DNA from: Hyphochytrium catenoides
Lineage: Eukaryota > Protista > Hyphochytriomycota
Direction: 5' to 3'
DNA length: 64,000 bases
Assembly (NCBI GenBank): GCA_900088475.1
Contig: FLMG01000261.1
Coordinates: 1-64,000, forward strand
The notes under the pieces are model-generated. The model saw only the letters and a list, made by a program, of their open reading frames with translations. It was not told the origin of the DNA and made no database searches. The position numbers were made by a program, and so were the translations under genes. Shown one piece after another: positions 1,139 through 62,756 of this stretch (its first letter is position 1; every line of letters begins with the position of its first letter).

Positions 1139-4100
1139 ATGGGTCTGCTGAACTGGAAGAGCAAGGTTATCTTGCCTGAGATCGATGAAAGGTAAGACGA
1201 TGAGAGCTTCTTCTCCCGCTGTTCTGAGCTTTGTGACTTTCTTTTATCTTTTTCTCTCCTTGCCCTGCACGTCTAACGGTCAAAGATCTCCCTGTCTCTG
1301 TGCTCTCTCTCTCTCTCTTGTCTCTGTACACTCTCACCCTTCTTTCTCCTTTATCTCCTTTCCATTCCTGTCTCCAGTTTGGGGTTCATTGTTCTTCAGG
1401 CTTTACTCTCTGTCCTCAGACTCTTTCGTCTCGATCTTGGTCAAGCCGTCCTCGACTACTTCTCTCTCTCACGCAAATGCTTTGCTTTGCCCACTCCTCC
1501 TTTTGCCTTCCAGAGTGGAGAATGTCCTCAAGCTTTATATGCGTAAGAAAGTCAAGACGTTCAGCAGTGCTTCTTGCGCCGCATCTCTCTCCTGTCCGAC
1601 CTTACCCACGACTCTTTCTCTGTCTCTCTGCCTCTCTTCTCGGTCGGTTTCTTTCCCTCTCTCTTGCGTCCATCCACTGACCATCGTCTTTGTAGTCTCT
1701 ACTGAGGATCTGGTGCACTTGTATAAGAGATTCTGCGAGTTTGACCGCGAGGTAAGGCACAGACGTTGACTCTACTGCTATGGCCTTTTTACCTCCTCCT
1801 TCAATGCCGTATGCACGATAACATCTCTTTCCTCTCTTTGGTTCTCTCTTTCTCCCTGGCTTTTCTCTGTCTTGTCCTGTCTCTACCTTCCCCGCCTCAC
1901 TCCCGCGTTCTCATTCTTTTATTTCTCACTCCCATTCTTTCTCTCTCTGTGCGTCTTTCTCTTTCTTGGTCTCTGCTCTCTCTCTCTCTCTCTCGTCAGT
2001 TTTCTTTCTCTCGTGTTATCTGTCACTCTTTTCTCCTCTCTTATCCTTCTAGAATCCTTCACCACTTACTCTTCAATCCGTTCCTACTCTTCTTCGAGAC
2101 GCATGAGGAGGGTGAATGACCCTATCCTTCGTCTCTTCCGCCTTTTCCCCTGCGGCACCATGCTAACACCATTCTTATTTTCTCTTTCTCTGTCTCTCTT
2201 CTCCCGTTCTCGCTGTCTCTCTTCTCCCGCTCTTTCTCTGTCTCTCTTCTCCTACTCTTTCTCTGTCTCTCTTCTCCCGCCCTTTCTCTGTCTCTCTTCT
2301 CCCGCTCTTCTCTCCCGCTCTCTGTGTCTCTGTATCTCTCTCTCTTCTATATGCAGTAAGTAAGAAGCGGAGAGATGGGTCTTTTTAGTTCCCTTTCCTC
2401 TGGCAGAGTTTCTAAAGGCGCTTTCGCTATCTTTCTTTTTTGTTGCTCTTCAGCAAGAGCGGGACGATAGAGGCAGACGAGTTCTATCTCAGCTTGGAAG
2501 AGAAGCCAAGCCCTTTTGGAGATGCGCTCTTCTCTCTTTTAGGTGACGCCAGGGCCACGCCTCCAGTCCCTTAGAAATAGAAGCTCCGCTATTATTCACT
2601 TATCCTCTTCCGTTTCCCCCTCTCTCTCTCACTCTCTATCTCTGTCTTAATGTCTCTCTCCTCTCTTTCTTCCCCGGCGTGTTGGCGCTTCTATCTTTTT
2701 CTTTCTTTCTTTCTTACTTGGAACTCAGGACCTTACATTCTTCTTCCCTTCTCCCATGCAGACGTGGACAACACCGGATCGGTGGATTTCTCAGAGTACA
2801 CGGTGACCGTCATGACATTCGGCATGTTTGGAGAGGAAGACGTGCTCAAGTGTGAGTATACAGGTTTCTGATCTCTCTCTCTCTCTCTTCCTCTCTCTCT
2901 GTCTCTCCTTCCCTGTCCCCCCAAAATGCTATGTCTTTCTCATCATCGCTGTAGGCTCCTCTCACCTCTAGCTTCTCTTTCGTCCTATGGCTCCGTCTCT
3001 CACACAGATACAACCTGATTCCTGTCCTTCTCTTCCAATTGGAGTCTCTCTGTCTCGTTCCTCTCACCTGCAAGCGACAGGGTAGCCCTTCTGGAGTTCT
3101 CTGTCTTGACCCCTGACTCTTCCTTGTTGTTCCAGCTCCGCTCATCATCTCGCTCAGCGTTTTATCGCCTGATGAAGAGAGACTTCGGCCAGATCCTCTC
3201 TCTCTCTCCTCTGTCTTCCAATCTCTAAACCTTGTTATCGTCACGTCACCCTGCTTCTCACTCTCCTTCTTCTCTATCAGCTTCGATCTGATACGTTCCT
3301 CCTCCCCTGTGGCCCTGCCTCTCTCCCTTTCCGTTCCACTTGCACTAGTCTGCTTTGGCATCTTCGATGCGGACAAGAGCGGGACCTTGGACCGCCTGGA
3401 GATAGAAAAGATCGTCGACCTGCTGCACGGAGATGAGAAGTTTGCCAATGCAAAAAAGGCTCTAGAGGCGATGGACGGCAACGGCGATGGTAAGGCTGAC
3501 TCTCTGCGGTCCTTCTCTCACTTCCAGTCTCCCAAAGCTGCCTGTGCTCCGTTTCTTCTTTCCCACTCTGCAACGTCAGTATCTTTCTTTTTTTCTCTTC
3601 ACCTCTCTCTGACTTCTCGTCTTTCTCTCTCTCTCTTTTTGTTACTTTCACTCGCTCTCCCTCGTACACTCTTTCATCCCTCTCTCTTGCTTGTTGGTTG
3701 GGTGCCTTACATCTCCGTGATGACCTTATCTTTCCCCTAGGACTCATTGACTTTGAGGAGTTCGTCGCCATCAACAAGCAGTTTCCTATGCTCTTCTATC
3801 CCGCATGTGAGCCCCCTCTTCCACTCCATCATTGCCACCCTCTCCCTCCTTCTCTCTCGTCGTGGTTTGTCTCTTGCTCTTCCATAGTCTATCCCAGGGA
3901 GAACCCTTCCGTCTCCAACACTAATGGACTTACCGGTGTCTTCGAACTATGTCCCACGGCTGACTCTCCCTCGTCCTCCCAGTCCGGCTGCAGCGGAATA
4001 TGTGGGTACGGCCTCTCTTTCGTATCACTCTCTGTCCTAAGCTCTTTCTCATCTCTCTCTCTCTCTTTGTGCGTCACGGTCTACGGCGCTCTACCTATCT

Positions 4101-5534: not shown

Positions 5535-8074
5535 NNNNNNNNNNNNNNNNNNNNNNNNNNNNNNNNNNNNNNNNNNNNNNTCTTCCTTCCCCTAATAACT
5601 GAAATATTGGCGTCTCCGGTGACATTCTTCACCTCCATAACCTTGACTGTCCCCGTTCTTATCTGTCGAGGGTACCGAAGGGCAAACCATGGACAAAGAG
5701 ACATGAGAAAGGGCACGAAGAGCGAGCTTCGAAGCAAAGGAAAAGAGCCATGAGATACAAAGTAGACAATGACTTAGAGGCCAAGAGCAGATCGAACGAG
5801 AGCAGCAAAATGCGCTTGCTTGCAGAGTGCGGGGGCCAATAATGAGAAGCCAAAATGGACTCAAATGATTCTTCTACTGCGGAGAAGCCAACCTGAGAAA
5901 GCAGCTCCTTCACTCGCCCTCTTGCCCACGCTGAAACGTCCTTCTCTTCATAGGTACCGCCTGTGTTCCACACTGATCCCACCTACTCGTGCGCCAGGCG
6001 ATAAGTCAGCGGAATAGATGACAACAAAGAGATCGGAAGGCACAGAGTGAGAAATAACAGCAATCTGAAGAATGGGTGGCTAGTAGGGACATATAAGGAG
6101 GGAAGAGGTGACAGTGCGCCAGAGCATAGACCAGAGGAGAGGCCGGATCCCCGCTATCCTGATGTGCGAAGACAGCTAGTAGATCACAAGAAAGATGGAA
6201 GACAGACAGCTGTTGCGCTCTCCCTAGCTCCTAACGATTTTCTCTTGCTTGCCCATAAAGTCTGCAAGGCTTACCGTGTCTTTGGCCTCCACCTTGGAGA
6301 GCTCTGCCTGGTCCACTTTCTTCGGCGCAATGTCGCCGATTAACTTCTTCGCCTCTTCGCTAAGTTCATTGTGGAAGTAGGTGGTCGTACGCCCATCAGC
6401 TAGCTTCTTATAGCCGCGGACGGCGGCCGCCTTGAGCTCTTCTTCTTCATCCACCTCCATCTTAGTTCCCTCGCTACGTTGCTCTTCCTTCGGCTTACTG
6501 TTGGTGCTGGATGAGACAGCGGACGGCCTAGATGGCTGCCGAGGCGTGGTCTTGTTGGAAGTTTGTCTGGGCGCCTGTGGGTGCCAATCAGTAGAAATAG
6601 GTAGAGAAAGAGAGAGAGATGCAGGGCGATTGTCGGATGGCAGAATCAGAAGATATTTGCCTATAGAGGAAGGCTATGGGAGTATCTATTGGGTGGCACA
6701 GGCCTAGAGGACGGAGCAAGAAAGCTCTCGCGGAGAGAGGGAAGAAGAAAGAATAGAAGCGGTTCTGTCGGGCAGGGACACCGATAGATCAAGACCAACA
6801 TCGAAAGAGATTGAAATATGATGGAACAGTGTCTTTACCTCTTCCTTCATCTTTTTGCTGAGCTCTCTCTCACTCTGTAACAGCTGCTGCACGGCCTTGT
6901 CATTGGGCTCCAGCGCCAGCGCTGCTTCCAGCGCCTCACAGGCCTCCCGGTGCCGCTTCAGCTTTGAGAGCGCTTGGCCCCGACGGAAGTGTCCCTGATG
7001 ATGACACAGGCATAGAAGCAATTGGCGTGAGATTGGACAGACAGAATAGCCTGAGCGTCAGCGACAATGACGGTAGAACGGGATGAAATGGCCAAGGAAG
7101 CATCACACAAGCTCTCAAGCTCGGCCTAGCGCATTAGAGGAGAAGGAGAGGTGATCCATGACTCTACGCAGCTCGATCGCTTCTCTCCCGTCCCTCCGTA
7201 TATCCTTACCTTGGCCCAAGACGGGCTTGCGGCTAGAGCTGAGTCAGCATCCTCTAACGCCTTCTCGAACTGGCCCATCATGCAGCGAGTGACCGAGCGG
7301 TTGCCCAGGACAGTCTGTTATATCATTAGAGCAGATAGTTCCGGGTTTGGCGGATGGTGAGTGAGGAAGGGAAAAAAAGCGAGGAAGAAATGACACAGGC
7401 ATAAAGACAAGACGAGGGGATAAGGAGAGGCTTTGACGTGCCCAGGAGGGGAGAGGTCGAGGAAAGTGAACGGTCGATGGAAAGAGGGACAGAGAGAGAG
7501 AGGAAAGGAAAGAGAGAAGAGGAAGAAGAGAAAGCTGGGAGACCTGAGTAGGAGAGCAGACGAAAACGATAGGATGAAGGGAGAAGAAAAAGCGAAGTCC
7601 TACATGCATGGCCGGATCCAGCTCTATGGCCCGAGAGTAGAGAATGTCAGCTTCTTCCAGGCGCCGGGCCTTGAAAGCAGCATTGCCCCGGTTCTTGATC
7701 TCGTCTGTCAGTGGTTAGACAGAGAAAGAGGTCAGCGAGAGAAATAGAGAGAGTAAAAGAGCGTAAGGAAAGATGCACAGCCAGAAGATGTGGTGCAAAA
7801 AGACTGCGGGAGACAAGGAGAGACGGGAACGAACTATCTCAGAAGAGAGAGAGAAAGAGCCAAAGTGGAGCAATAGTCCAGCGCAAGTGCAAGGACCGCC
7901 AGAGACAAATCGACAGAAAGAGAAGCAGGTGGCCAGGGGAGTATCGGGGCAGAGGTTAGACAGAGTCAAGCATGGAAGAGAAAAGCACGATCTACCTAGC
8001 AAACGCGCCTTCTCCTCGTCTGTCTGAGGGACAGCATCAAGTATGTCTCCGTGAGCCTGCCGAATCGGAATCAT
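5080..8074 (-). CDS. Hsp90 co-chaperone: N-terminal TPR domain fused to Aha1 N-terminal (activator of Hsp90 ATPase) domain
   Basis: TPR exons IKNRGNAAFKARRLEEADILYSRAIELDP, GNRSVTRCMMGQFEKALEDAD and GHFRRGQALSKL..LEPNDK; linker RGYKKLADGRTTTYFHNELSEEAKKLIG; Aha1_N-like SVWNTGGTYEEKDVSAWARGRVKELL, VTGDANISVIRGRK, YLYELSFSIK. Last exon ends QFSSEFNAM-TAA at 5080. Confidence 0.85.
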
Positions 8075-8130: not shown

Positions 8131-8385
8131 CTATGGGAGTGGAGAGCACCTGATCTTGCGAAGTGACCGGCGGGGAAACTGTGGAGAGAGGTTGTTGACA
8201 AGAGATGGTGGTCGGAGAGATGCGAGATTGATAAAGAGAGGAAGAAGAGGCTAAGCGAAGAGAGCAAGAGAGAGTGCGAGAGACCAGAGAGAGTGAGAGA
8301 GAGAGAGAAAGAGAGAGAGGCAGAGAGAGACACAGAGAGAGAGAGGGAGCGAGGAAGGAGAGGGAGAGCGGAGAGGAGAGATAAG

Positions 8386-8417
<32 letters not shown>

Positions 8418-8810
8418 CTTATCATCGGCCACAGAAAGCTCTAGAAACCAACAGCAATCTATATTCTGGAAACTTTCGTGCCCCTATTACCTCTAACAAA
8501 TTCAAGGCAAAATTACAAATGCAAAATGGGTTGTAGTATTGAAGCTTTCCCGCGGTTCTGATCGTCGCCACTTCAAAAGGCTGTCCCCCACCTAAATCTC
8601 AGCTGGTTTCTCTCTCTCTCTCTCTCTCTGTCTCTCACACACATCTCTCTCTCTCTTTCTCTCTCTCTCTACTCTCTCTCTCTCTCTCTCTCTGCTTATC
8701 CTCTTCTTCTCATCGAGCTCGCATTTCTACGACCACCATCTCTTGTCAACCTGTTCGCGCAGGTTAACCCCCGGTCACTTCTGAAGATCAGGTGCTCTTC
8801 ACTCGCATAG
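8131..8810. repeat. Imperfect inverted repeat (arms 8131-8256 and 8694-8810) enclosing (AG)n and (CT)n tracts
   Basis: Left arm ctatgggagtggagagcacctgatcttgcgaagtgaccgg..gttgacaagagatggtggtcg..gaagaagaggctaagc is the reverse complement of gcttatcctcttcttc..cgaccaccatctcttgtcaac..ccggtcacttctgaagatcaggtgctcttcactcgcatag. Confidence 0.9.
8433..8478. promoter_or_regulatory. Possible degenerate heat-shock elements upstream of the Hsp90 co-chaperone
   Basis: GAAagCTCtaGAA (8434-8446) and TTCtgGAAacTTTC (8464-8477) each miss a three-unit nGAAn inverted array by one base. Their position fits the gene function. Confidence 0.3.
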
Positions 8811-15940: not shown

Positions 15941-17189
15941 TCACGCGGAGGATTTGCTCTTCTTCTTCTTCTTTTCCTTGGCCTGCTTCACTCCCTCTCT
16001 CTCTCCTTCCTCTCTTTCTCGCTTCATTGGTGCCTCTAGCTGCCCCTCGTCCTTCTTCTTCTTCTTCGACTTCTTCTCGCTGGACTCCTCACTCCCATCG
16101 CGCTTGAGAGCAGCATCTAAACCTCGAGAACAGTTAGAGAGGCAGATGCAAGGAGGCAGGGAGCCCTTAAGGCAAAGAGCTAGGAGGCAACCTGTGAGAG
16201 AGGCAAGAAGCGAGTGGGGCAAGCAAGGGGAGACGATCAAGAGAGAAAATGCCACCTGTTGAGACCGGAAGTTCTGAGCCATGTCCTGCCGGTGTGAAGC
16301 GCACCCTGAGGCCCTGCTTCTGAGCAACTGCAGAGTACGCTGTGACCTTCTTCACCATCCTTTCCTCCTCCTTCCTCTTCTCCAGTCCTCCCTGCTCCTC
16401 CTGAGCTGATGAGCGAACGACCTCAAGAAACAAAGCAGGTTGTTGCTCCGCTGAGAATTCAGCCAAAGTAGAGTGATCGTATGTTAGCCAGCAAAGATAG
16501 GCGAGGAGCAGATGAGGTGGCGAAAGAGCTGTGCTGAAAGGTAGGCGACCACGGAAGAGGAAGGAGACCATCAGATCAGTTCGTACCAGGATAGAGCTTC
16601 TCTCCGCCCCTTTGCGGTCTGAGAATGGGGAAGATCTGTCCAGCGGTGCTGGGGTCAGCAACCTTGATGTCATACTGCTGACCTCCAGCCTCAAGAGTCT
16701 TTAGCACTGAGCATGAGAGAGAAAGCATCGCATCAGAGAGGAGAGACGATTGTCAATCAATTGTGAACGAGACAACAGGAGCACGTCATAGCTGCAAGTA
16801 GGAAACAAACGCCTGCCTTCTCTCCGCCTCAACCACTGAAGGAGTTTGGAGAAGAAGTCCACGTGGGGATGAGGGAAAGACGAAAAATGCAAGAATGACA
16901 CTGAAAGTGGGCTGCCGCGCCATGAGAAAGGTGTATGCTGCCCACCTTTCCCAGGCCTGCTAGCGTGACTGGACTTCAGCTTCAGCCTCGTTCCGTCCAA
17001 GACTTCGGCGTCAACCTGAGAAGACAGCGCACGAGACCCAGAGAGAGTCAAGGAAAGGCATCGCNNNNNNNNNNNGATGTGCTTGTTAGAGTCCAAGGCA
17101 AAGTCTTCTAGAGCCAGTCCATCTCCTTGGTGCTCTATCAGCTGGAAAGTTCCGTCTATTACTCGCGGTTCTCGGCTTCTCTTCCCCAT
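15941..17189 (-). CDS. RNA polymerase I subunit RPA34 (A34.5/PAF49)-like protein
   Basis: Spliced product MGKRSREPR..VDAEVLDGTRLKL..VAQKQGLRVRFTPAG followed by a lysine-rich tail (KKSKKKKK..KEKKKKKSKSSA). The QxxGLxxRFxPxG motif plus K-rich tail resembles the RPA34 family. Contains a small N gap. Confidence 0.55.
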
Positions 17190-17576: not shown

Positions 17577-17639
17577 GGAGAGAAAGAAAGAGAGAGGGAG
17601 AAGAGAGAGAAAGAGAGAGAGAGAAGAGAGGAAGAGAGG

Positions 17640-17705
<66 letters not shown>
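17577..17705. repeat. (AG)n microsatellite in the 5' region of the RPA34-like gene
   Basis: Direct observation. Confidence 0.95.
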
Positions 17706-17706
<1 letters not shown>

Positions 17707-17793
17707 AGGGGTAAGATGATGCCTCACCTCCAATCCCTCCCTCAACCCCTCAGCGTCCTCGATTTAACATAAAGGCGTTAGGATTCACGATAC

Positions 17794-17958
17794 TGTGGTA
17801 ACCTACCCTTCCTACCCTCCTGTAGCCTCCTAGCCCATCCACCCCTCAAGCCTAATGTATGGCCTACAGTACCGGCTTCCAAGTCTCCTGACCCACATTC
17901 TAAATAATGGCAGCCAACAATTTCCTTTGACATCCCACCAGTCGAGTCGCCCCTCACA
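17794..17958 (+). repeat. 5' LTR (short; starts TGTGG)
   Basis: Aligns with 24410-24544 (ttccaagtctcctga, taatggcag, ttgacatcc shared). The 3' end (17940 or 17958) is uncertain. Confidence 0.75.
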
Positions 17959-18104
17959 GTGGCTCGAGCCTCACATCAGTCATTCAGTTTCTGAAGTCGA
18001 AAGCGGGCCGGAAGCTGGTGCTCGGCTGGGAAGACAAGAGGAGAGGAAGGTAACGAATCGAAACTGGTAGGGGCTGTGAAAACAGCAACAAGGAGAAGGG
18101 AAGA

Positions 18105-20830
18105 ATGGTCGCGACGCGTAGTCAAGCAGCGTCTCACAGGTAGCGGAGGAAAGCGGACGGGAGGCGGCAGTCAAATCGCGGGCCGTGGACGGACTAGAAG
18201 CGCAGGCACGCCCAGCGCAGAGGCCAGCAGGACAGGTAGGAACCCAGTTCGGCACGAGCGAGAACTAACGGCTTCATATCCCTCTGCTGCCGATAATGCC
18301 AGGTTGATTCCACCGGCCATGGTGGAGGAGATTATCGCTTCCGAGGAACGTAAGCGGAAACGCGAGGATATTACCGTTGTGAGGGACGAGGAACGTTCCG
18401 ACCGAGGGGAAGGATGGCAGGGAGGAAGGACTAGGAATGTTCTTCCACCTCCAGGTTTTTGGCCCTTGAGACGGGGGAAGAGGGACTGCTCTCTGGACTG
18501 TCTCCACTCCCTCTCCTGGTCGTCCCTGGGTCTGACCTCTCCTCAAGGATCAACGGCGAACGAGATGGAAGCGTGCCGAGAGCGAACATTCCTAGTCCTT
18601 GCTCCCTGCCATCCTTCCCCTCGGTCGGAACGTTCCTCGTCCCTCACAACGATAATTCTCGCGTTTTCGCTTATTCCTCGGAAGCGAAATGGCGTTCCAC
18701 TAACCTCCGCACTATGTCGGTAATCTCCTCCACCATGGCCGGTGGAATCAACCTAGCGTTATCGGCAGCAGAGGGAGAGGAGCCGTTAGTTCTCGCTGGG
18801 GCGGAACTGGGTTCTTACCTGTCCTGCCGGCCCTGCGCGGGGCGTGCCTGCGCTTCTAGTCCGTCCACGGCCAGCGGTTTAACTGCGGCCTCCCGTCCGC
18901 TCCCTGTGAGACGCTGCTTGACTACGCGTCGCGACCATTCTTCCCTTCTCCTTGTTGCTGTTTTTACTGACCCAACCAGGTTCGGCTCGTTACCTTCCTC
19001 TCCACTCCCACTCCGGGTCGTCCTCTGGGTCTGACCTCTCCTCAAGGGCCATACACTTGGAGGTGGAAGAACTCTCCCGATTCTGCCTCCTGTCCCCATT
19101 CGGAAGAATGCGAGCGACTGCGGGAGCGCTCTCCAGACCCGCTCCTACTCTTCGGTGGAGACGGCGTCCTTTCTCTCCTCCGCGGAGCTAAGGACTGCTG
19201 TCCCCGCCTGCTGGAGCTCTCTCCCTGCATCGCCTGTCTCCGTCCTGCAGCGCCTCTGTTCTGTCGTGGTTCCTGCCACTGTTTGACACTTCCCTTGGGG
19301 ACGCGGGGGTCCTACCCCGCTCTGAAGGAGCCCCGGTTCCTGCCGCGCTCCTCCCTACCTGGGCTTCCCACCCGAGCCCTAGAAGTGTCCCAATTCCATC
19401 GACTCTGGCTGCCTGGGGTCCGGGTTGAATAGAAGCAGGTCCCGAGAGCGATCCCGCAGTCGCTCGCTGTCTCCCGATGGGGACAGGAGGCAGAATCGGC
19501 AGAGTCCTTTCACCTCCAAGTTTTTTGCCCTTGAGGAAAGGTCAGACTCAGAGGGCGACCAGGAGTGGGAGTGGAGACAGACCAGAGAGCGGCCCTCTCT
19601 CCTGTCGAACGGCTCCCAACGTTCCTTGCAAAGGGAAGCCGGGGAGGACTTCCCGCCCATGAGCGGGATAGGATTTCCACATACGATGGCAAGAGTAGCT
19701 TTAGCCACCACGTGAGCACGTTGGCAAGGTGCACTGAGTGATACACGGACGCTCAGAGGACGGATGCGTTGGAGCTATCTCTTGCGTCCAATTGTGATTA
19801 TGTCATGCTGCTAGTCAGTGAGGAGCAGCGTCAGACATACGCAGCGTTAGAGAAGCGCCTGCGCGAATTGCTGAATAGCGACCTCCTTAATACCGATAGC
19901 ACCTACTTAGTGCAGGAGACGTTAGCTAAGCTGGAGGAACAGGTACGGGAAGAACCTAAGGCGGGCGAGAAGGTGGCGTGGATTACGTGGGTCAATGAGG
20001 AAACGCTCTTGAAGGATCTTCGGCGCCAGTATGAGGGCTATTATGGGCCCGCGAGCCGTACCCGTACCAGAGAATGGGCCACATGCTCCTGAATGGCTTG
20101 AAGCAGCATCCTAGGGAGGCGGAGTTGCGAGTGTTGGTAGCCTTCCGCAGCTCGGTCACAGACAGGAGGACCTTTGAGGCCCTGGCCACGGGGCTGCAGG
20201 TAAAGTATAGAATTGCTTTGAGCACGAAAAAAAACGTGTCCTTCGCGGCACAGGAGAGGAAAGAGTGGGGCCGTTTAACCACGTACAAATGCCGGAAGTG
20301 CACTACCAATGCACATAGCTGGAAGCAGTGACCGAAGGCAGAAGCCCGGCCTCTCACCAACCACGCCACCGTCCACGGCAGGAAGCAACGGACAATGAAG
20401 GCCACCAGTGGTTGACGAGAGGACCGCTTCCAGCTATGGGCATTGGTAGTGCACTTCCGGCATTTGTTAGGGTACTCCGTTAGCATAGGTGCAGTGCTTC
20501 ATCTGCAAGAATTTTCGGCATTTCAAGTCGGACTGCCCCAAAAATCAAGTCAAACCAAGTCAAAGCTGTGGGAAACGGCCGGAAGACGGAGAGGGCGTGA
20601 CTCTAGTCTCCGAAGGAGCGCTCACGCCTGTGGACGAGGTGGAGGAAGTAGCTGCTCCGGCCCCGGAAGGGCTGGCGCTGCAGCTACAGGATCGAGGACA
20701 CGCTGGGAAGGTTGTGCCTTTGGCGGTCGAGGCCGGAGCCACTCCGGCCCCGGAAGGGCTGGCGCAGCAGACACAAGAACAACGGCAGACTGGGAAGGTT
20801 ATGCCTGTTGTTAAGGTGAGGAGCACCACC
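18105..20830 (+). pseudogene. gag: gag remnant with RS-rich region and two CCHC zinc knuckles, interrupted by inverted segments
   Basis: CRKCTTNAHSWKQ* (last Cys replaced by TGA) and CFICKNFRHFKSDCP; an 87-nt direct repeat at 20655/20742. Confidence 0.75.
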
Positions 20831-23800
20831 TTCCTACAGCTCTGCGTACAGGGGAAAAGCGCACGAGTAGGGATGACACAGGCGTCGAGGTGTCGCTAGT
20901 CAATCGCGAGTGGTTGAGGACCAACAGCGTTAGCGTCAAGGTGCTGGGAAAGCAGCAGACACTGTATGATGCTTTGGGCACCGGCCGATGAGGACCAGAG
21001 GGTCGGTGAGGCTTTTGGTTCAGATGGGGTCACATTCTTGGACTGGAAGTTTTTGGTTGTTCAAGGGCTGAAGACCGACATACTTCTTGGGCGGGACGCC
21101 TATGGTGTAGAGGAGATGACATTACGACTGAACGGACCATCTACGCGTGATTCAGCGAGTGAGCAACCAGGGACAATCATAGGGAAGGTAGCGAGTGAGG
21201 ACCCTGGACCGGCCTCTTGTTAGGCTCCAGAGATGTTATCAAGGTGGAGGGAGATTTGCTCGGGTACTTTAAAGGGAAAACATAAATGTCCCAGTCTCCC
21301 CAGGACTACCGTTAGGTACTCCGAAGCGCAGGTTGTCTCCATTAGAGCGCAAAAAGGTAAGGAACACATGCAGGAGTTGCATAGTAAGGAAACTATTAAG
21401 CGTACGGCACACGCAAAGTACAGCTCACCCTTCTTACCAATAAGGAAGCCAAAAGGAGGTGACCGTAGTGTCCTGGACCTTCGGCGAGTAAATAAGCATT
21501 TAGATAAACATGCATATTCCATTCCTCTAGGCGATGACCTTTTTTGATTCACTTCATCGAGCAGAGTGCTTCTCCACTATGGACTTAGCAGAGGGGTTCC
21601 ATCAGGTGGGAATCACCGATGACATGGGAGAAGTCTTTACCTTTGTCACGGATGATGGTGCCTCTGCGTACCAACACTTACCAATGGGAGCTAAGGTCTC
21701 TCCAAACATTTCTCAAAAGGTGATGGACTTTACATTGGAAGGCATCCGCATTAAGTTTGTTATTTGTTACATTGACGATCTCCTGACGTTCACTAAGCAA
21801 AGGGAGGACCCCTTTGAGCACCTTGAAGTCGCCTTCCTACGACTCCGGACCCAAGGCCTCAAATCTTTTATATATCTCCGACAGTAATTTACCATTCCTA
21901 AGAAGACCCTGACCTCCGCGCGCGGCATTCCTCGGAGCTGGCCTTGCAGCTATGGCTGCTACCCAAGGCCAAGTGTCACTTTATATGCCAATCGGTCGAC
22001 TTCTTAGGGCATCGTGTGCAGCGCGGCGGCATCTCCCCACTACAAAGTAAGGTAGCAGCCATTGCTGCGAGGCCAGCTCCCAGGAATGCCTCGGAGGTCA
22101 GGGTCTTCTTAGGCATGATAAACTACTATCGGAGATATATAAAAGATTTTACTAAATCGGCAGCTCCTATTCAGCGCTTGCTCGGGAAAGGCAAGCTATT
22201 CTGTTGGGGCCAAGAGCAACAGGTGGCATTTGATACGTTAAAGAACAAGTTGCTGGAGGAACCAGTCTTCTTGCATACACCTGACTTTAAGAAGGCAGCA
22301 CGGCTCGTTGTGTATACAGATGGGTCAAAGGATGCGTTAGGAGCAGTCTTTGCCCAACAAGATGAGATCGGGAAGGTGCAAGTCTTGCAATACCTGAGCC
22401 GTAGTATAAGAGGGTCAGAGCCCAAGGACCCACATTTTGAGGCCATGGCAGTCTACTGGGCGGTCAAGAAGCTGCGGCCTTATCTGCTGGGAAGGCAGTT
22501 TACCGTGGTGACGGATCATAAGCCTTTGGAAGGGCTTATGAAGACTTCAGACCCCCAAGGCTTCAAGGCTAAGTGGATATCATACCTGTTGCAATACGGC
22601 TTTCAGATTGTTTTTATCGGAAGGGTACACAGCACGGCAACGCGGATGCGCTTAGTCGAGATCCGCGTTACGCTGTCAAGATTGTACAGGCGGCAGCTGA
22701 TGTAACACATGCTGTCATGTTGGCACAGTGTGGGGACCCAGAAATTGCGCAATTACGCGGCTCAGTCCTCACTCGTCTGCAGAGCAGCGACAACGGTTGT
22801 CCTTTCTTGTCCATGAAGGGCTGGTATATCGGTTGAAGGCTGATGCCCCTATAGAACAGCCTGATAAGGTGCTGCTCGTGCCCAGGAGCTATCGTAGGCA
22901 AGTATTACGCTGGTTCCATGATGAGGCGTCGCACATTGGTGTCACGCGCACCTACAAGACTATAGCGCTGCGCTATTATTGGCCTAGCTTACACAAAGAC
23001 GTTCGTGAGTATATAGCGCAATGTTACTTGCCAGCAATATCCTCACACGGACAAACAGATGAACATTCAATAATTCACCTTGCAGCCGGAAGCTGTCAAT
23101 GAGGCCCGGGTCTTTGATGTTAAATACATGCCTCGTAGCCTGGAAAGCTACATTGGGCTCCTCGTGGGAATCGAGGTACTGGCCCACTAGCCGGAGGCAT
23201 TTCCTCTCAAAGAGATGACGGCGTCCCACATTGTAGCCGTCCTTCACAAGTATTCCTGTCGCGACATAGTGTTCCTAAATTCATCGTCACGGACGGCACA
23301 AAATACTTCTTATCAGGAGCCGTGAAGGAGTTTTTCAAAAACTAGGCTCTCGACATGAGGTGGACTCTGCTTACCAGCACGGTCCCACAGCCACGACAGA
23401 GCGCCTTATCAGGACACTGCAGCACATGGTGCGCAAGTATGTGGACGACGACCAGGCAAATTGGCCTGGCACCTTAGAAAGCCACTTGGCAGCGTATCGC
23501 TTTTCTGTCAACTTAGTCAGGGGCTTTTCGCCCTACTACCTGATGCACGGAGGACGAGAGGCGAATGTACCAGGAGACCTGGTATTGCGCGATAAGGATG
23601 CAATGCGAACGAGGTTTAAGACCACTCAGGATTACATCCCGTACCTCCAGAGACATTTCCGCCAAAGCCTTCTTACGACTAGAGCTCGGAAGACTCGAAG
23701 GGCGCAGGCTCAGATAGCTATTGGCCAGCCAGAGGAGGACACTGCAGGTGGTGGACTGTCTGAGGACACCCTTAGGCCAGCTGAATCGTTGCCATTCGTC

Positions 23801-24106
23801 GCGAGGCGTCTGAGGCCTTTACCTACGCCGCCGCTGGCACCTCTACTTCCTGGAGACAAAGTCTGGCGTTACATTCCTAACAAGGTGGCGGGAGGGTCTC
23901 CAAAACTGGCCAAGAATTGGTGGGGGCCTTACGAAGTGATGCGTCAAGTAGGGCCGCTCACATACCTCGTCAGGGGAGCTATTGAGCACCAGGGTGCAGG
24001 TAATAATGTGTTCTGGAAGGAGGTCAAGGTGCATAGGAAGCACTTGCGCTTGATCTATCAAGCAGAAGAAGGGACTTCGACGCTAGGCCCGGTGTTCAGA
24101 GTCTGA
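20830..24106 (+). pseudogene. pol: pol remnant (PR-RT-RH-INT), frameshifted
   Basis: Conserved motifs are spread over ORFs 21233, 21534, 21944, 22728 and 23360 in different frames. No chromodomain is visible. Confidence 0.92.
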
Positions 24107-24369
24107 GCATCACTGGCGATAGAGCAGAGGCCGCCGCCGCGGCAGCACACTTGCCTCTGGTTCCTCAATGTTAGGACTCCTCGCGTAGCCGCCGTGTGCT
24201 ACTGAGGCCATTGGCTTTCTTACTGCGGAGAATTGGAGTTTTCGGCCAGCCTGAAGCACTTATGTAAGTAGTTAAGTAAGTAGTTAGGACTTGCCAGCAA
24301 CAGAATTAAAATTAAGTATTGCAGTAGGGAGATCTTGTCGGAGGTAGGTGGAGAGAGGGTCAGCACTCG

Positions 24370-24409
24370 GAGAGGGGATGCGGAAGGGAGGGGATTTGGG
24401 GGAGGGCCG
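24370..24409 (+). other. Polypurine tract (plus-strand primer site)
   Basis: gaggggatgcggaagggaggggatttgggggaggg immediately precedes the TG start of the 3' LTR. Confidence 0.75.
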
Positions 24410-24544
24410 TGTGGTGAGCTGCCCCTCCTACCCCCCCGGAACCTTCTGACCCATCCTCCCCACGAGCCTAGGGCCTATAAGTTTCCAAGTCTCCTGAACC
24501 ACATAGAATTGTAATGGCAGTCACCAAGTTCCTTGACATCCACA
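24410..24544 (+). repeat. 3' LTR (TGTGG...CCACA)
   Basis: Perfect 5-bp terminal inverted repeat; homologous to, but clearly diverged from, the 5' LTR. Confidence 0.8.
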
Positions 24545-24658
24545 GTCCTATTTGGCTTCAATAGCCTCTAACGGCCATATTCAAAACGAAGCGTCATGCC
24601 CACCTTCAACTCTTTGTCTCACAGAACTGGGCTACCTAGCTCTAGCGCTCTCTTCCAG

Positions 24659-24660
<2 letters not shown>

Positions 24661-24726
<66 letters not shown>

Positions 24727-24741
24727 CGCTCGCTCGCTCGC

Positions 24742-24775
<34 letters not shown>
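24661..24775. repeat. (CT)n/(CTCG)n microsatellite upstream of the acidic-protein gene
   Basis: Direct observation. Confidence 0.95.
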
Positions 24776-40327: not shown

Positions 40328-40876
40328 TACTCTGTCTCGGTTACTCTGTCTCCGTCTCTCTTCTCCATTTCTCTCTTCATGTCTCTTCTCTCCTCTTCCT
40401 CTCTCCTCCCTGTGAACCAGATCCGCNNNNNNNNNNNNNNNNNNNNNNNNNNNNNNNNNNNNNNNNNNNNNNNNNNNNNNNNNNNNNNNNNNNNNNNNNN
40501 NNNNNNNNNNNNNNNNNNNNNNNNNNNNNNNNNNNNNNNNNNNNNNNNNNNNNNNNNNNNNNNNNNNNNNNNNNNNNNNNNNNNNNNNNNNNNNNNNNNN
40601 NNNNNNNNNNNNNNNNNNNNNNNNNNNNNNNNNNNNNNNNNNNNNNNNNNNNNNNNNNNNNNNNNNNNNNNNNNNNNNNNNNNNNNNNNNNNNNNNNNNN
40701 NNNNNNNNNNNNNNNNNNNNNNNNNNNNNNNNNNNNNNNNNNNNNNNNNNNNNNNNNNNNNNNNNNNNNNNNNNNNNNNNNNNTACTCTGTCTCGGTTAC
40801 TCTGTCTCGGACTCTCTTCTCCCCTCTCTCTCTTCATTTCTCTTCTCTCCTCTTCCTCTCTCCTCCCTGTGAACCA
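40328..40876 (+). repeat. About 95-bp imperfect direct repeat flanking an assembly gap
   Basis: tactctgtctcggttactctgtctc...ctcctccctgtgaacca occurs at 40328 and 40784 with several differences. Confidence 0.8.
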
Positions 40877-40905
40877 CATCTTCCTCCCTCTCGGACTCCC
40901 TTCTG

Positions 40906-47238: not shown

Positions 47239-50200
47239 CTAATCATCCAGCTGGGTCAACATGGCTACGCCTCGGCCGACCCAGTGTTCTTCAGGGAGGT
47301 CTGATGGTAAACGAATAAAGCAAATGAAGTTCGTAGAATGACCAGTGGTTGAGAGGACACCCCGCCGATCACTATATGACAAGAGGGAACAGGAGATGCG
47401 CTTTAGTGACGACCGAATCAGAGCTTGAACCAGCGAGAAGGTTGCGACAACTGTAACACGCAGGGGAATGATATAGACATTCAGCGCTCTCTTTGAAAGC
47501 GGCCATATTGACGAACGGACAATGAAGAGCTAGCCTCTTTTGCAGCTTACCTTGTTTTATAAAGAGGACAGGTATAGTGCGGGTACTTCCGCACCTCTAC
47601 TTTCTTGACTGGTCGGAGCCACATGAGGGGAGCAGGAGTGAAGAGAACCTTTGGCAGAGACTCTGCTAGAGATCCACTTGTCTTGTCCCAGCGTGCCCCT
47701 TCAAGGAAGAGCCCCCGCACAAACACTCCGTCCTACGGTTAGCACCAGACACTCTGTTAGGCCTCTACATTACATCTTCCCTCTTCTCCGTGATTGTATA
47801 CGGGTTCGGGGGTTTCCTCACCTGAGGTTTATCCTCATAGTTATCCTTTGGCATCATGTCGAAGTCAAACGTCAGGTTATCTGAGAATGAGGGAAAGTGT
47901 TGGAAGGGAAAAAAAATGGTGAGGGTCTATCGCTGGTTCTGCGTGAAGTATCTTCAGCTTCCGACATGGTCACCCGTTTATTCTTACAAGCTTACCTATT
48001 GGGATCGTGTACTTCCTGGCAAAGTTCTGGCTCGCGCCAGTCAGAAACGCCTGAGTAAAGAAGAACCCGGATAGCCAGTAAACGGTTGGAGGCTTATCCT
48101 CTAGCCAGGTCTGGAAAAACTCAAGTCGCACTAGCAAATCGTTGACGTAGCTAGAAGCAGGCTTGAGAGAAGGATAAGATTTAGCCATCCACATGGCTGG
48201 GATTTTACCGAAGAAGAGCGAGTTGCCAAGTTTTTCCAAATCAACGGACATCACGATTAAACCCTTGATGGCCTTTCCTAAGTTCACTAAACTGGACCTG
48301 ATGACACCGAGGAGATTGTTGAAGCGAATGAGCTCCTGACAGAGCACCGTGTTCATCGACTCTTCCCACTGTACAGGATAGCGGATCTGTGCCATCTCCA
48401 TGTCGAAGTTCGCAGGAAGCTTGGCAAGGATGTCTCTAGCAATGCCAGCCGTCACCTCCTCTTGGGACACAGCTCCTTCACCCCCGCCGGATGAGTTTCC
48501 TTGAGTGAGAAGTATGTCAGAAAAGAGACGAGAGGTTTCGTTCTGGTTCTTGGTGATGTTCGCATTGTCATGCAAGCCAAAGACCTCGGGAGGGGCGACC
48601 AAAGGAAGAGTGTTAATTTGACGAAGGTAGGCATCGTGACCTCCGTCCTCAGGCACCTTGTATAAGCCCGAGGAAGACAAGGGTGCGCCCTCATTAAGAA
48701 CAGAGAGGTCATAGAAGCGGTTTAAGATGCTGTGCAAGGTCCGCCTGTCCTTATCGTCAGTCACTCTCCCTCCATAATTGCATTCTCCTGTGCAATAACG
48801 CAGAGCTTTCAGAGGAATCTTTTCGTTCTCGTCCAAAAACATTGCTAGCTGTCTCACACTGATGCGAAGGTCTGACGCATTGAACTCATAAGGAATATTC
48901 CATCCGAGAGGCCCAAACTGTCTCCTCTCTTGCACTACTGCATGGAAGAAACAGAGACCAAAGAGCAGCCTCCGGAACTCCACCCCCTTTGAGCATGACT
49001 CAAAGAAAGATTGATCAGCAATAGGGTCACTTAGGTATGAGCTTAGTAGGTTAGAACGGAGTCCTTTGGGCGGTTCCAGAGTCATCTTCACCCCATTCTG
49101 CAGGACGGAGACAGGAAAGACGTCCGAGGGATAGGTCGTGCACCAAAGCCGGAAATTTGCATGTGTTCCGTCGTTGTTTAACTCCTCGGTAGTCTTTTCC
49201 ATGGTAGACATCCAGGATGGTGCAAGATGGCAGTTCTGGAGTACCACCCATGTGCCATTTGCGCGGGCTTTTTCAATCATTGCCTCAGCAATAGGACCCT
49301 GTCCTTGCCCAAGAGAAATGCTTTCAGTCTTCTGGCCTTGGCTCTCCGCAAACTTCAGGACGGCTGTCATGGGGTCAGCACCCGGTGAGAGGATGAAAAT
49401 GAGTGGCGAGATCTTGGAGCTATCCTGGAAGCAAGAGCCCAAGTCGAAGCTAGGAGGACGGACAAAATCCTCTCCCATTACCGCAACAACATAATTTTGA
49501 ATGCCTAGCATTACTCTGTCGGGTCGGATGCATCGGAGTGGCAGAAGCTTTTGAAAGCCTGTCAAATCTTGGTCCCAGTGCCCTGGCAACTTCTCCATAT
49601 GAGCCTCCGTGCTATCATATATTCTTTTCCATTCCTCTTTCTGCGCCTCAAACTCTTCCTTCAGCATTCTGAAGGCTGGCAGCTCAGAGAGGCGGCAGAA
49701 CTCTCCCCATTGCTTGTCGCTGAGCCATTGTGGAGCAGGATTTGGCGTGGGGTTATCCATGGCCACGCCGCCCGTCAACAAGAAGTACCATTCTCCTTGG
49801 TCAATAAGCTTCCGACCCTTAAGCACACTGATGGTTAGGAGAAAAGAGAATAGAAGCTTGTCCTTCTCTAGTAGGGACCGGGACACGTTCCGGTACAAAG
49901 AGTAAGTGAAGTGGTCATCGAGGATCTTCAGCCTTTTAACTATGTCAGGGCTTTTCTCGCTGAGACGAATGCTGAGGTTGAATAAGTTGATAAACCAACC
50001 CAGCGCGTACTGATATACGGGCTCGATGTTGGCTAACTCCGCGATGCAGAAGAAAAGCACTTGGGAAGAATAGGCCACTGACTTGTAGCCTTGCCGGACC
50101 TCGTCAATCTCCTTCTCGGTGTCTTCGGCGATTTTCTGCTTAGCTTTGATCTCGTCGGACACACTCTTACTCTGGTTCAAAGTGCTAATCGCAGCCTCAT

Positions 50201-61652: not shown

Positions 61653-62756
61653 GATCAAGTTATCACCACTTAAGCCAAACGGGAACTACATGGAGCAAGA
61701 AGGAGTGGCAGCAACAGCCAAAGCCAAAGCAAAGCTCATCGGCCTCAGTTCTGGAAGGCTCGCGATTGCTATACTCAGCACCTACCGAGCCTTTCTGACT
61801 GACGTCTCTCGGGCTACCGTTGGCTCTCACTGCCTCAAATTTGCCTGGTGAAGCGGTGGGCACTGCAGAAGTGCCGTCTCTGAATCTCAGGGCTCACTTC
61901 TCTGGTGCCATTGAACACCAAGGCGGACTTGCCGTCTCAGGACTCCACAGCAGGCAAACCAGAGAAAGTTGTTTTGCCTTGAAAGGAAGCGCCACTTCTG
62001 TCATCGCCTGTGCCGTTTCAGTGCGCACGGTGAAGGCCTTTGGCACTCAGCCAGGGGATAACCCCGCTGGTGAGTACAACTTTTAGGGATAACCGTCGGC
62101 TACCAAAGGAAACCTTCACTAGTTGATGAAGCTTTCAATAATGTGGAAGCAATCATTCTCCGTTAGCTTCCTTCTGTATCGCACGGCCGATTGAATTATT
62201 CTCAATCCTAGTTTTCACCGAAAGCTTTGTGTTAAACTATTCTCAATAGTATCTCTCATTCTCACCAGAGGTTGCCAATAAAGCAGACATTATCTCCAAT
62301 AGGTAAGCCTCGTTAAGCCTGGTACCTTATCACACTGTAGTAGTACATGTACTGTACAGTTGTAGTGCTGATTGCTTCTGATCCATTTTTGAGCAGCATT
62401 CATTTCGGTAGCTTCTGATCATTTTCGGAGCTCGTTGGATCCGAGTCGCTCTGCATATAAGACATAAGAGAACAATCTCTCAGATCTCACTTTATCTTCT
62501 CTCTGAGATCAGCTGATCGAGCTGGACAGCACCTTCAATCTTCATCAGCGCCGAAGAGGACAAGTGAGTGAGTTGTCCAGCCATAGAGAATCGTAGTCAA
62601 AGGCAGGTCCCGAGGTTGATACGTACAGTACTTCGATGGAGTGAATAGGCTGTGTGTGTCTGACTGTAGCCTGGCGGATTTGGGATGTCTGTGGAGAAGG
62701 ACGAAGCAGACGTACTCAAACGCCACTCCTAACGGAAGAGAGAGTTGGAAGGCACG

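What the first reader, a model, noticed from the sequence alone, without database searches (positions are those of the whole stretch)
17794..24544. Gypsy element carrying at least four antisense patches: candidate self-silencing hairpin / TE-memory locus
Seen: four separate inverted-repeat pairs lie inside one element (18040-18442 with 18584-19003; 19000-19150 with 19427-19577; 20285-20326 with 20426-20467; 21861-21963 with 22051-22149). Each antisense copy lies within about 90-280 bp of its sense partner, and none is identical to it. Known: inverted TE rearrangements such as maize Mu killer yield hairpin RNA and siRNAs that silence the family in trans. Inference: one transcript from the LTR or the flanking host promoter would fold into a chain of stems covering the gag start, RS region, zinc knuckle and RT, so a process may repeatedly write antisense fragments next to their homologous sites.
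Basis: partly seen in the sequence, partly recalled or inferred. Interest (0 to 1): 0.8.

Follow-up and report, generated by a model that had tools for sequence, protein, structure and literature searches.

The report
Fold-back repair scars in dead Gypsy
A long-dead Gypsy retrotransposon in a stramenopile genome carries five local "copy-yourself-backwards" insertions, the signature of DNA ends folding back during repair or replication; any transcript across them would form long hairpins, but nothing here shows that the cell uses them to silence the element.

Summary
All four inverted pairs sit at the stated coordinates. BLAST E-values are 1e-13 to 0, arm identity is 87-96%, loops are 87-276 nt, and RNA-fold z-scores are -14 to -54.

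The element is a decayed Ty3/Gypsy copy with 145-nt LTRs, RT, RNase H and integrase, and several frameshifts. It lies in a stramenopile genome that looks like a sister lineage of oomycetes. It is not human.

Dissection gives five events, not four, because the 5' palindrome region is three nested events. Each event is an inverted copy of sequence 70-280 nt away. The RT patch is an exact 95-nt insertion with 3- and 5-nt junction microhomologies and no loss of coding sequence. The big palindrome arm joins through an 8-nt microhomology.

The arms (8.6% diverged) are younger than the LTR pair (17.6%, p=0.004). So most patches arose after integration, in host DNA.

Such clustering is unusual: 1 local inverted repeat per 19 kb in 64 control Gypsy loci, P~5e-4. 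One similar inverted duplication lies in non-TE intergenic DNA at 8131-8810.

Best reading: recurrent fold-back (snap-back) template switching, with early palindromes provoking later ones. Hairpin RNA is a possible by-product. The arms show no sign of selection for pairing. The silencing or "memory" idea is untested.

The parts
17794..17940 (+). 5' LTR (~145 nt, starts TG, ends CA)
   Evidence: Direct repeat with 24410-24544. There are 108 matches, 23 mismatches and 15 gap columns.
18037..18442 (+). Arm A: original leader / gag-proximal sequence, source of the large palindrome
   Evidence: Pairs with 18584-19006. No protein family hit.
18421..18470 (+). Event 2 patch: inverted copy of the event-1 patch (equivalent to 19041-19090), so in sense orientation relative to 19486-19535
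   Evidence: 40/50 identical to the reverse complement of 19041-19090, and 28/32 to 19504-19535 in direct orientation. Its first 22 nt are included in arm A/A', so it predates event 3.
18479..18548 (-). Left part of the event-1 patch (antisense copy of 19529-19598)
   Evidence: 63/71 identical to the reverse complement of 19529-19598. It is collinear with 19048-19150 as one antisense copy of 19427-19598.
18549..18583 (.). 35-nt filler of unknown origin at the event-3 junction
   Evidence: No match elsewhere in the window or element.
18584..19006 (-). Arm A' = event-3 patch: inverted copy of 18037-18442
   Evidence: 400 matches, 34 mismatches, indels including a 31-nt one. RNA fold of 18030-19010 gives -807 kcal/mol, z = -54.
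18999..19047 (-). 49-nt direct duplicate of 18501-18548 made in event 3. Its first 8 nt (18999-19006) overlap the end of A' as microhomology.
   Evidence: 46/49 identical to 18501-18548. Overlap of arm coordinates; sequence.
19048..19150 (-). Right part of the event-1 patch (antisense copy of 19427-19528)
19151..19426 (+). Loop of event 1 (original element sequence between patch and source)
   Evidence: No internal repeats. Lies between the arms of pair 2.
19427..19598 (+). Module U: sense Arg/Ser-rich region upstream of the capsid-like ORF, source of event 1
   Evidence: Translation; pairs. Fold of 18995-19600 gives z = -17.
20285..20329 (+). First zinc-knuckle motif (CX2CX4H..., in frame with the gag ORF 20035-20328), source of event 4
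20423..20467 (-). Event-4 patch: antisense copy of the zinc-knuckle segment, loop 93 nt
   Evidence: 43/45 identical. Fold z = -14. A second, complete CCHC knuckle follows at ~20489-20540.
21531..21863 (+). Reverse transcriptase, up to ...GLK
   Evidence: RVT_1 E = 2.8e-16. P0265 residue 383 ends at 21863.
21864..21958 (-). Event-5 patch: clean 95-nt insertion, antisense copy of ~22056-22146. Arm homology runs 21861-21963 because of AAA and CTACC junction microhomology.
   Evidence: P0257 hits 21919-21860 on the minus frame. Fold z = -17.
21959..22702 (+). RT thumb and RNase H. Contains the source of event 5 at 22051-22149.
   Evidence: RT_RNaseH E = 1.6e-23. P0265 residue 384 starts at 21959.
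22701..24103 (+). Integrase region (zinc-binding H2C2, fragmented core, C-terminal SH3-like), with frameshifts
   Evidence: Integrase_H2C2 E = 1.4e-17. Frame changes seen in the tblastn map.
24340..24409 (+). Purine-rich tract just upstream of the 3' LTR (polypurine-tract position)
   Evidence: Read from the sequence.
24410..24544 (+). 3' LTR
17578..17708 (.). (GA)n tract left of the element. With (CT)n at 24661-24775 it forms a pair that would be ~200 nt apart without the element.
24661..24775 (.). (CT)n tract right of the element
8131..8810 (.). Non-TE local inverted duplication: arms 8131-8417 and 8609-8810, with unique sequence plus (GA)n/(CT)n and a ~190-nt spacer
   Evidence: The unique part has 101 matches and 15 mismatches.

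Best explanation
The patches are scars of fold-back (snap-back) template switching in host DNA, made after the Gypsy copy had integrated and died.

Proposed mechanism:
1. At a break or stalled fork, a 3' end folded back on its own strand through a few bases of microhomology.
2. This left a loop of about 70-280 nt, and the end copied 45-420 nt of itself.
3. The end was then rejoined, again through microhomology, at or near the point it had left.

Each event therefore wrote an inverted copy of nearby sequence beside its source. This happened five times. Three events are nested at one spot in the 5' leader/gag region. There, each palindrome probably provoked the next break, and the result grew into a 970-nt palindrome.

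The events are visible here because a dead element tolerates them. A transcript across them would form long double-stranded stems and could feed RNA interference. That would be a by-product and is not shown.

Shown: the anatomy, the junctions, the nesting order, and the relative age of arms and LTRs. Inferred: the break/fork origin, the palindrome-driven recurrence, and any RNA consequence.
For: 1. Every patch copies sequence only 70-280 nt away.

2. Patch D is an exact 95-nt insertion. P0265 residue 383 ends at 21863 and residue 384 starts at 21959. P0001 shows the same. AAA and CTACC are shared between patch ends and target.

3. The 5' region resolves into three ordered fold-back events. Taking out 18549-19047 leaves one collinear antisense copy of 19427-19598, with 150 matches, 21 mismatches and no gap at the splice. 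Event 3 carries an 8-nt junction microhomology, 35 nt of filler and a 49-nt direct duplication. All three are typical of template-switch repair.

4. The arms are less diverged than the LTRs: 63/729 against 23/131, Fisher p = 0.004.

5. Event divergences fall in the nesting order: event 1 at 12.3%, event 3 at 7.8% with its companion 49-nt duplicate at 6.2%.

6. A similar inverted duplication with a ~190-nt spacer lies in non-TE intergenic DNA at 8131-8810.

7. Arm mismatches look neutral: 33 transversions, 12 and 18 wobble-compatible transitions for the two strands.

8. The same architecture has been demonstrated experimentally. In yeast, fold-back on microhomology with a 41-nt loop is followed by capture with 0-5 bp of microhomology (PMC11724301). 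Snap-back SD-MMEJ is described in PMC5728401.
Against: - Patches of 45-423 nt are much longer than the 5-34 bp typical of the yeast events.
- Five events in 6.75 kb is far above the control rate (P ~5e-4). It is also above the rate in ~27.7 kb of non-TE DNA outside long ORF pieces in this window (P = 0.001-0.006). A purely generic process does not by itself explain that clustering.
- The arm divergences are not significantly heterogeneous (p = 0.22), so one burst cannot be excluded.
- Event 1 is not significantly younger than the LTRs (p = 0.25).
- Gene conversion between arms could make them look younger than they are.
- No target-site duplication is detectable, so the two LTRs might come from different copies by recombination. 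That would inflate the LTR age.
- No other copy of the family or more of the genome could be examined.
Confidence: 0.6

Rival explanations
1. The patches were made by the element's own reverse transcriptase during the single reverse transcription that produced this copy. Nascent cDNA repeatedly snapped back on itself and returned to the template, so a scrambled cDNA was integrated.
For: - It explains why five events are concentrated in one element and almost nowhere else in the window.
- It explains why arm divergences are statistically homogeneous.
- Self-priming and template switching are intrinsic to reverse transcriptases (my own knowledge; template switching by RTs is reviewed in 10.1101/2021.05.13.443781, listed).
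- Event 1 is not significantly younger than the LTRs.
Against: - Arms made at reverse transcription should be as diverged as the LTRs. Pooled arms are half as diverged (8.6% against 17.6%, p = 0.004). Event 3 alone differs at p = 0.002.
- Divergence falls with nesting order.
- A comparable inverted duplication exists in non-TE DNA.
Confidence: 0.2
2. Whatever made the patches, the locus is kept by the host as a hairpin-RNA source that silences the Gypsy family in trans.
For: - The stems are long and stable: arms of 45-420 bp, z = -14 to -54.
- They cover gag, the zinc knuckle and RT.
- The element sits between a (GA)n and a (CT)n tract in what looks like a divergent intergenic region, so read-through transcription is plausible.
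- In Phytophthora, also stramenopiles, inverted repeats are the most productive small-RNA loci per Mbp (PMC3804510).
Against: - The arms show no sign of selection for pairing. About half of the mismatches are transversions, there is no G.U-preserving bias, and a 31-nt indel interrupts the longest stem.
- No close relative of the family (over 50% identity) was found in 1.84 billion representative proteins, so there may be nothing active left to silence.
- Transcription, small RNAs and the host's RNAi genes were not testable here.
Confidence: 0.12
3. The inversions are artefacts of amplification or assembly, such as inverted chimeras from multiple-displacement amplification or misjoined reads.
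For: The assembly is a gapped draft with five runs of N in the window. One N gap is flanked by a 97-nt direct duplication (40328-40423 / 40784-40880). That shows the assembly has local errors.
Against: - No N gap lies within the element; the nearest is 17065-17075.
- Chimeric artefacts copy their source exactly. These arms differ by 4-13% and by indels of up to 31 nt.
- The junctions carry microhomology and one is in register with the protein to the residue.
Confidence: 0.04
4. The patches are nested insertions: a foreign foldback or MITE-like element for the large palindrome, and fragments of other family copies for the rest.
For: Large palindromes near Gypsy elements do occur elsewhere, for example an 827-nt palindrome just upstream of the 5' LTR in L033/L038.
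Against: - The loop of the large palindrome is itself built from copies of the local module 19427-19598.
- There is no target-site duplication at 18037/19006.
- No other copy of any patch exists in the window.
- All five patches lie within 280 nt of their source, which random insertion would not give.
Confidence: 0.03

Closest known systems
Fold-back (snap-back) templated inverted insertions at double-strand breaks or stalled forks (yeast Pol delta/NHEJ events, PMC11724301; synthesis-dependent MMEJ, PMC5728401; short-range template switches in ape genomes, PMC7954356)
   Same: - An inverted copy of adjacent sequence, separated from its source by a short spacer.
- Microhomology of a few bases at both junctions.
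- No loss of flanking sequence (patch D).
- Filler DNA and a small direct duplication at a complex junction (event 3).
   Different: - Patches here are 45-423 nt against mostly 5-34 bp.
- Loops are 70-280 nt against 41 nt or less.
- Five events are clustered in one 6.75-kb dead element, and three are nested at one site.
Maize Mu killer and other transposon-derived hairpin loci
   Same: An inverted duplication of part of a transposable element whose transcript would form a long hairpin homologous to the family.
   Different: - Mu killer is one large rearranged partial copy at a separate locus, read from a flanking promoter, with demonstrated small RNAs and heritable silencing.
- Here there are five small patches inside a dead copy.
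- No expression or silencing data exist, and no active family members were found.
Inverted-repeat small-RNA loci of Phytophthora (PMC3804510)
   Same: The host also belongs to the stramenopiles. There, inverted repeats give more small RNA per Mbp than transposons or genes, mostly 21-nt.
   Different: Those loci were defined by small-RNA reads. Here only the DNA structure is known, and the host is a different lineage (malic enzyme only ~65% identical to oomycete proteins).
Self-priming (snap-back) by reverse transcriptase on nascent cDNA (my own knowledge; RT template switching in 10.1101/2021.05.13.443781)
   Same: It produces inverted copies of nearby sequence joined through short homologies, and it would affect a single element copy.
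   Different: It predicts arms as old as the LTRs. Here most arms are about half as diverged.
Palindrome growth and inverted-repeat amplification at short inverted repeats (ODIRA, PMC4689423; fold-back inversions, PMC7467729)
   Same: Existing inverted repeats promote hairpin formation, breakage and further inverted duplication. This fits the three nested events at 18.4-19.2 kb.
   Different: Those systems give kilobase-to-megabase duplications or chromosome rearrangements, not sub-kilobase internal patches.

Membership tests
Ty3/Gypsy LTR retrotransposon | Two long terminal repeats in direct orientation, TG...CA | tested here: met
   17794-~17940 and 24410-24544. There are 108 matches, 23 mismatches and 15 gap columns. 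Both start TGTGG and end CA.
Ty3/Gypsy LTR retrotransposon | Domain order RT - RNase H - integrase on one strand | tested here: met
   RVT_1 at 21531-21884, RT_RNaseH at 21902-22702, Integrase_H2C2 at 22701-23099. Collinear with full-length relatives.
Ty3/Gypsy LTR retrotransposon | Gag with CCHC zinc knuckle | tested here: met
   One complete CX2CX4HX4C motif at ~20489-20540 and a partial one at 20285-20329, read from translations. No Pfam hit for gag.
Ty3/Gypsy LTR retrotransposon | Polypurine tract before the 3' LTR and primer-binding site after the 5' LTR | tested here: inconclusive
   A purine-rich tract at 24340-24409 is present. No TGG-type primer-binding site is recognisable directly after 17940.
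Ty3/Gypsy LTR retrotransposon | Target-site duplication of 4-6 bp | tested here: not met
   The flanks GATAC (17789-17793) and GTCCT (24545-24549) do not match. This could be decay or inter-element recombination.
Fold-back / snap-back templated inverted insertion | Inserted DNA is an inverted copy of sequence close by on the same molecule | tested here: met
   All five patches. Sources lie 70-280 nt away.
Fold-back / snap-back templated inverted insertion | Microhomology at the junctions | tested here: met
   Patch D has AAA and CTACC. Event 3 has 8 nt, TCTCC(A/T)CT. For events 1, 2 and 4 only 2-3 nt or unclear, because of divergence.
Fold-back / snap-back templated inverted insertion | Flanking sequence otherwise intact (insertion, not replacement) | tested here: met
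   Patch D: homologues align without a missing or extra residue across the site. Event 3: the interrupted event-1 patch is collinear once 18549-19047 is set aside. This could not be checked for events 1, 2 and 4.
Fold-back / snap-back templated inverted insertion | Usual size of a few to a few tens of bases | tested here: not met
   Patches are 45, 50, 95, 172 and 423 nt, against mostly 5-34 bp in PMC11724301.
Hairpin-RNA silencing locus (Mu killer type) | Inverted duplication of transposon sequence able to form a long stem | tested here: met
   Fold energies from -121 to -807 kcal/mol, z = -14 to -54.
Hairpin-RNA silencing locus (Mu killer type) | Transcription through both arms | not testable with these tools
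   No expression data. The promoter scan is for bacterial promoters only.
Hairpin-RNA silencing locus (Mu killer type) | Small RNAs from the arms and silencing of family members in trans | not testable with these tools
   No small-RNA data. No other family member found: best relative 50% identical, none in the window.
Foldback / MITE-type transposon insertion | Terminal inverted repeats flanked by a target-site duplication, dispersed copies | tested here: not met
   No duplication at 18037/19006. The loop is made of local sequence. No other copy in the window.
Amplification / assembly chimera | Inverted copy identical to its source, often at contig or gap edges | tested here: not met
   Arms differ by 4-13% plus indels. 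No N gap in the element.

The most novel reading that the evidence does not exclude
A host or element-linked process targets transposon DNA and deliberately writes antisense copies beside their source, for example breaks directed to TE chromatin followed by obligatory fold-back repair. Old insertions would thus be converted step by step into multi-hairpin silencing triggers, a heritable 'memory' of the family. The excess of events in this element over control Gypsy loci and over the window's other non-coding DNA does not exclude this.
Probability: 0.05. Interest if true: 0.85.

Novelty: new member of a known kind. Interest (0 to 1): 0.4.

Why it matters
If the reading is right, this locus is an unusually legible natural record of fold-back template switching. 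It holds five dated events with resolvable junctions, and three of them show how one palindrome seeds the next and grows to about 1 kb.

It also shows how a dead retrotransposon can acquire long hairpins covering gag, the zinc knuckle and RT without any special machinery. That is the raw material from which hairpin-RNA silencing loci are thought to arise.

Both ideas are directly testable. A genome-wide count in this organism would show whether such patches favour transposons. Small-RNA data would show whether they are used.

Tried and rejected
**Shared lineage feature.** L033 and L038 have an 827-nt palindrome at the same distance upstream of RNase H as palindrome A. Their LTRs show it lies outside the element, upstream of the 5' LTR at 3658. 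L033 and L038 are also one locus sampled twice. Rejected.

**Finding other copies of the family or the source genome.**
- The word-based protein search found nothing above 44% identity.
- The exhaustive representative search found nothing above 50%.
- The metagenome scan found nothing above 40%.
- tblastn found no other Gypsy fragment in the window.

**The (GA)n...(CT)n pairs as a repeat family or MITE.** Their spacers and outer flanks are unrelated. Rejected. Only the 8131-8810 pair has unique sequence in its arms.

**Selection for RNA pairing.** There is no excess of wobble-compatible mismatches.

**RIP-like mutation.** Transitions and transversions are about equal. Rejected.

**Other negatives.**
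- Rfam and tRNA scans of the window found nothing.
- The origin of the 35-nt filler at 18549-18583 was not found.
- One fold call failed on length and was re-run in pieces.
- The third word-based protein search was left unused because no claim depended on it.
Full report
**What is there.** The window is eukaryotic and not human.
- It carries very long exons of a dynein heavy chain (47970-61658, minus strand), a malic enzyme, and MT-A70, EF-hand, MIT and DDHD genes.
- The malic enzyme is 61-65% identical to proteins of all oomycete groups and about 55% to those of diatoms and other ochrophytes. I infer that the host is a stramenopile outside the sampled oomycetes. Its own proteins do not appear in the searched collections.
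- The assembly is a gapped draft with five N runs, none inside the element.

**The element.**
- 17794-24544 is a Ty3/Gypsy retrotransposon on the plus strand.
- It has ~145-nt LTRs that start TG and end CA, and a purine-rich tract before the 3' LTR.
- It has a CCHC knuckle, then RT, RNase H and the integrase zinc-binding domain in that order.
- Full-length relatives map collinearly but through at least four frame changes, so the copy is dead.
- No target-site duplication is detectable.
- The LTRs differ at 23 of 131 aligned sites, with 15 gap columns.

**The observation.**
- Arm identity is 92%, 87%, 96% and 92% once gaps are set aside. Loops are 141, 276, 93 and 87 nt.
- In a self-comparison of the whole window these are the only strong local inverted repeats apart from one at 8131-8810.
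- Each pair folds far better than shuffled sequence, with z = -54, -17, -14 and -17.
- As a control I ran the same scan on 64 metagenome contigs that carry distant Gypsy relatives (308 kb). They hold 16 local inverted repeats, several of them duplicates of one locus or outside the element. That gives 0.35 expected in 6.75 kb and P(>=4) = 5e-4.

**Anatomy of the simple patches.** Patch D is the clearest.
- The RT reading frame ends at ...GLK (21863) and resumes at LPKAKCHF (21959).
- In P0265, residue 383 ends at 21863 and residue 384 starts at 21959. P0001 shows the same.
- So 21864-21958 is a clean 95-nt insertion with nothing lost.
- It is the reverse complement of RT-thumb coding sequence about 90 nt downstream. 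P0257 matches it on the minus frame.
- AAA at the left junction and CTACC at the right are shared by patch and target.
- Patch C (20423-20467) is the reverse complement of a partial zinc knuckle that lies in frame with gag 93 nt upstream.

**Anatomy of the 5' region.** This region looks chaotic but resolves into three ordered events.
1. Event 1 placed a 172-nt antisense copy of 19427-19598 to the left of 19151, leaving a 276-nt loop.
2. Event 2 placed a 50-nt inverted copy of part of that patch just to its left (18421-18470, loop about 71 nt).
3. Event 3 struck inside the event-1 patch. It added 35 nt of filler, a 423-nt inverted copy of 18037-18442 that includes 22 nt of the event-2 patch, and a 49-nt direct duplicate. 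The join runs through an 8-nt microhomology at 18999-19006.

I tested this model by prediction. 18479-18548 followed by 19048-19150 should be one uninterrupted antisense copy of 19427-19598. They align with 150 matches, 21 mismatches and no gap at the splice point. That concatenation was made by reference inside a script, only for this alignment.

**Timing.**
- Pooled arms differ at 63 of 729 sites (8.6%). The LTRs differ at 17.6% (Fisher p = 0.004).
- By event: event 1 is 12.3%, event 2 is 20% (only 50 sites), event 3 is 7.8% with its companion duplicate at 6.2%, D is 8.1% and C is 4.4%.
- This order agrees with the nesting.
- The support is limited. Heterogeneity among arms is not significant (p = 0.22). 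Event 1 is not distinguishable from the LTRs (p = 0.25).
- Most patches therefore arose after integration. Whether they came as a series or a burst is open.
- Two caveats apply. Gene conversion between arms would make them look younger. LTRs of mixed origin would look older.

**Mechanism.** The structure matches fold-back template switching.
- A 3' end pairs with its own strand through a few bases, leaving a loop. It copies itself and is then recaptured through microhomology.
- For patch D I worked this out base by base.
- Yeast experiments show the same architecture at induced breaks: a 41-nt loop, inserts of 5-34 bp and capture with 0-5 bp of microhomology (PMC11724301). Related snap-back repair and short template switches are described in PMC5728401 and PMC7954356.
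- The patches here are much longer.
- I infer that the three nested events at one site reflect palindrome fragility, with each hairpin-prone structure inviting the next break.

**Is it specific to the transposon?**
- Against: a comparable inverted duplication lies in non-TE intergenic DNA at 8131-8810. Its arms carry 116 unique aligned sites (12.9% diverged) plus a (GA)n/(CT)n tract, with a spacer of about 190 nt.
- For: about 27.7 kb of non-TE sequence outside long ORF pieces holds only that one event, against four or five in 6.75 kb of element (binomial P = 0.006 to 0.001).
- This comparison assumes equal tolerance. That is doubtful in a compact genome.

**Function.** Nothing in the sequence points to maintenance of the stems.
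- Of 63 mismatches, 33 are transversions. The wobble-compatible classes number 12 and 18 for the two strands.
- The longest stem carries a 31-nt indel.
- No relative closer than 50% identity exists among 1.84 billion representative proteins, so an active family to silence is not in evidence.
- In Phytophthora, inverted repeats are the most productive small-RNA loci per Mbp (PMC3804510). A by-product role is therefore plausible if the locus is transcribed.

**Limits.**
- No further sequence of this genome and no same-family copy could be obtained.
- No expression or small-RNA data can be consulted.

**Verdict.** The process looks like known fold-back repair or replication switching, not a dedicated system. 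The silencing or memory function is untested.

Noticed in passing
window 8259-8417/8609-8711; 17578-17708/24661-24775; 29518-29586/29752-29884; 33600-33673/33867-33932: Eight of the ten GA/CT microsatellite arrays in the window form opposite-orientation pairs separated by 165-200 nt of unique spacer. The pair around the Gypsy element is ~200 nt apart once the element is removed, so the element landed in such a spacer. The spacers are unrelated to one another. They may be divergent-promoter architecture or eroded fold-back duplications.
   Followed up: partly
window 8131-8810: A genuine non-TE inverted duplication. About 128 nt of unique sequence plus the (GA)n tract is repeated in inverted orientation across a ~190-nt spacer, with 12.9% mismatch in the unique part. 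It lies upstream of a TPR-like gene on the minus strand (7247-7714).
   Followed up: partly
window 21849-21858 and 21961-21970: The same 10-mer (ACCCAAGGCC) lies on both sides of patch D and is read in two different frames (TQG and PKA). Both readings are supported by homologues. Before the insertion the two copies would have been 17 nt apart. Whether this direct repeat favoured the break is unexplained.
   Followed up: no
window 20638-20719 / 20725-20806: A tandem direct duplication of 87 nt (29 codons, 79% identical) lies between the zinc knuckle and the protease region of the element.
   Followed up: no
window 40328-40423 / 40784-40880: A 97-nt direct repeat (93%) flanks a 357-N gap. It is probably a gap-edge duplication from scaffolding.
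   Followed up: no
L033:2618-3424 and L038:2985-3791: An 827-nt imperfect palindrome (80% between arms) lies about 230 nt upstream of the 5' LTR of a distantly related Gypsy element (LTRs at L033:3658-3997 and 8432-8775). It appears in two metagenome contigs that are the same locus (98.6% identical).
   Followed up: partly
L020:2391-2602 / 2969-3180; L061:1806-2029 / 2278-2471 and 3379-3423 / 3503-3547: Other environmental Gypsy-bearing contigs also carry one to three local inverted repeats, one of them 98.6% identical. Isolated events of this kind are therefore not rare. I did not check whether they lie inside the elements.
   Followed up: no
window 17789-17793 and 24545-24549: No target-site duplication flanks the element (GATAC against GTCCT). 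This could be decay or a sign that the two LTRs come from different copies through recombination.
   Followed up: no
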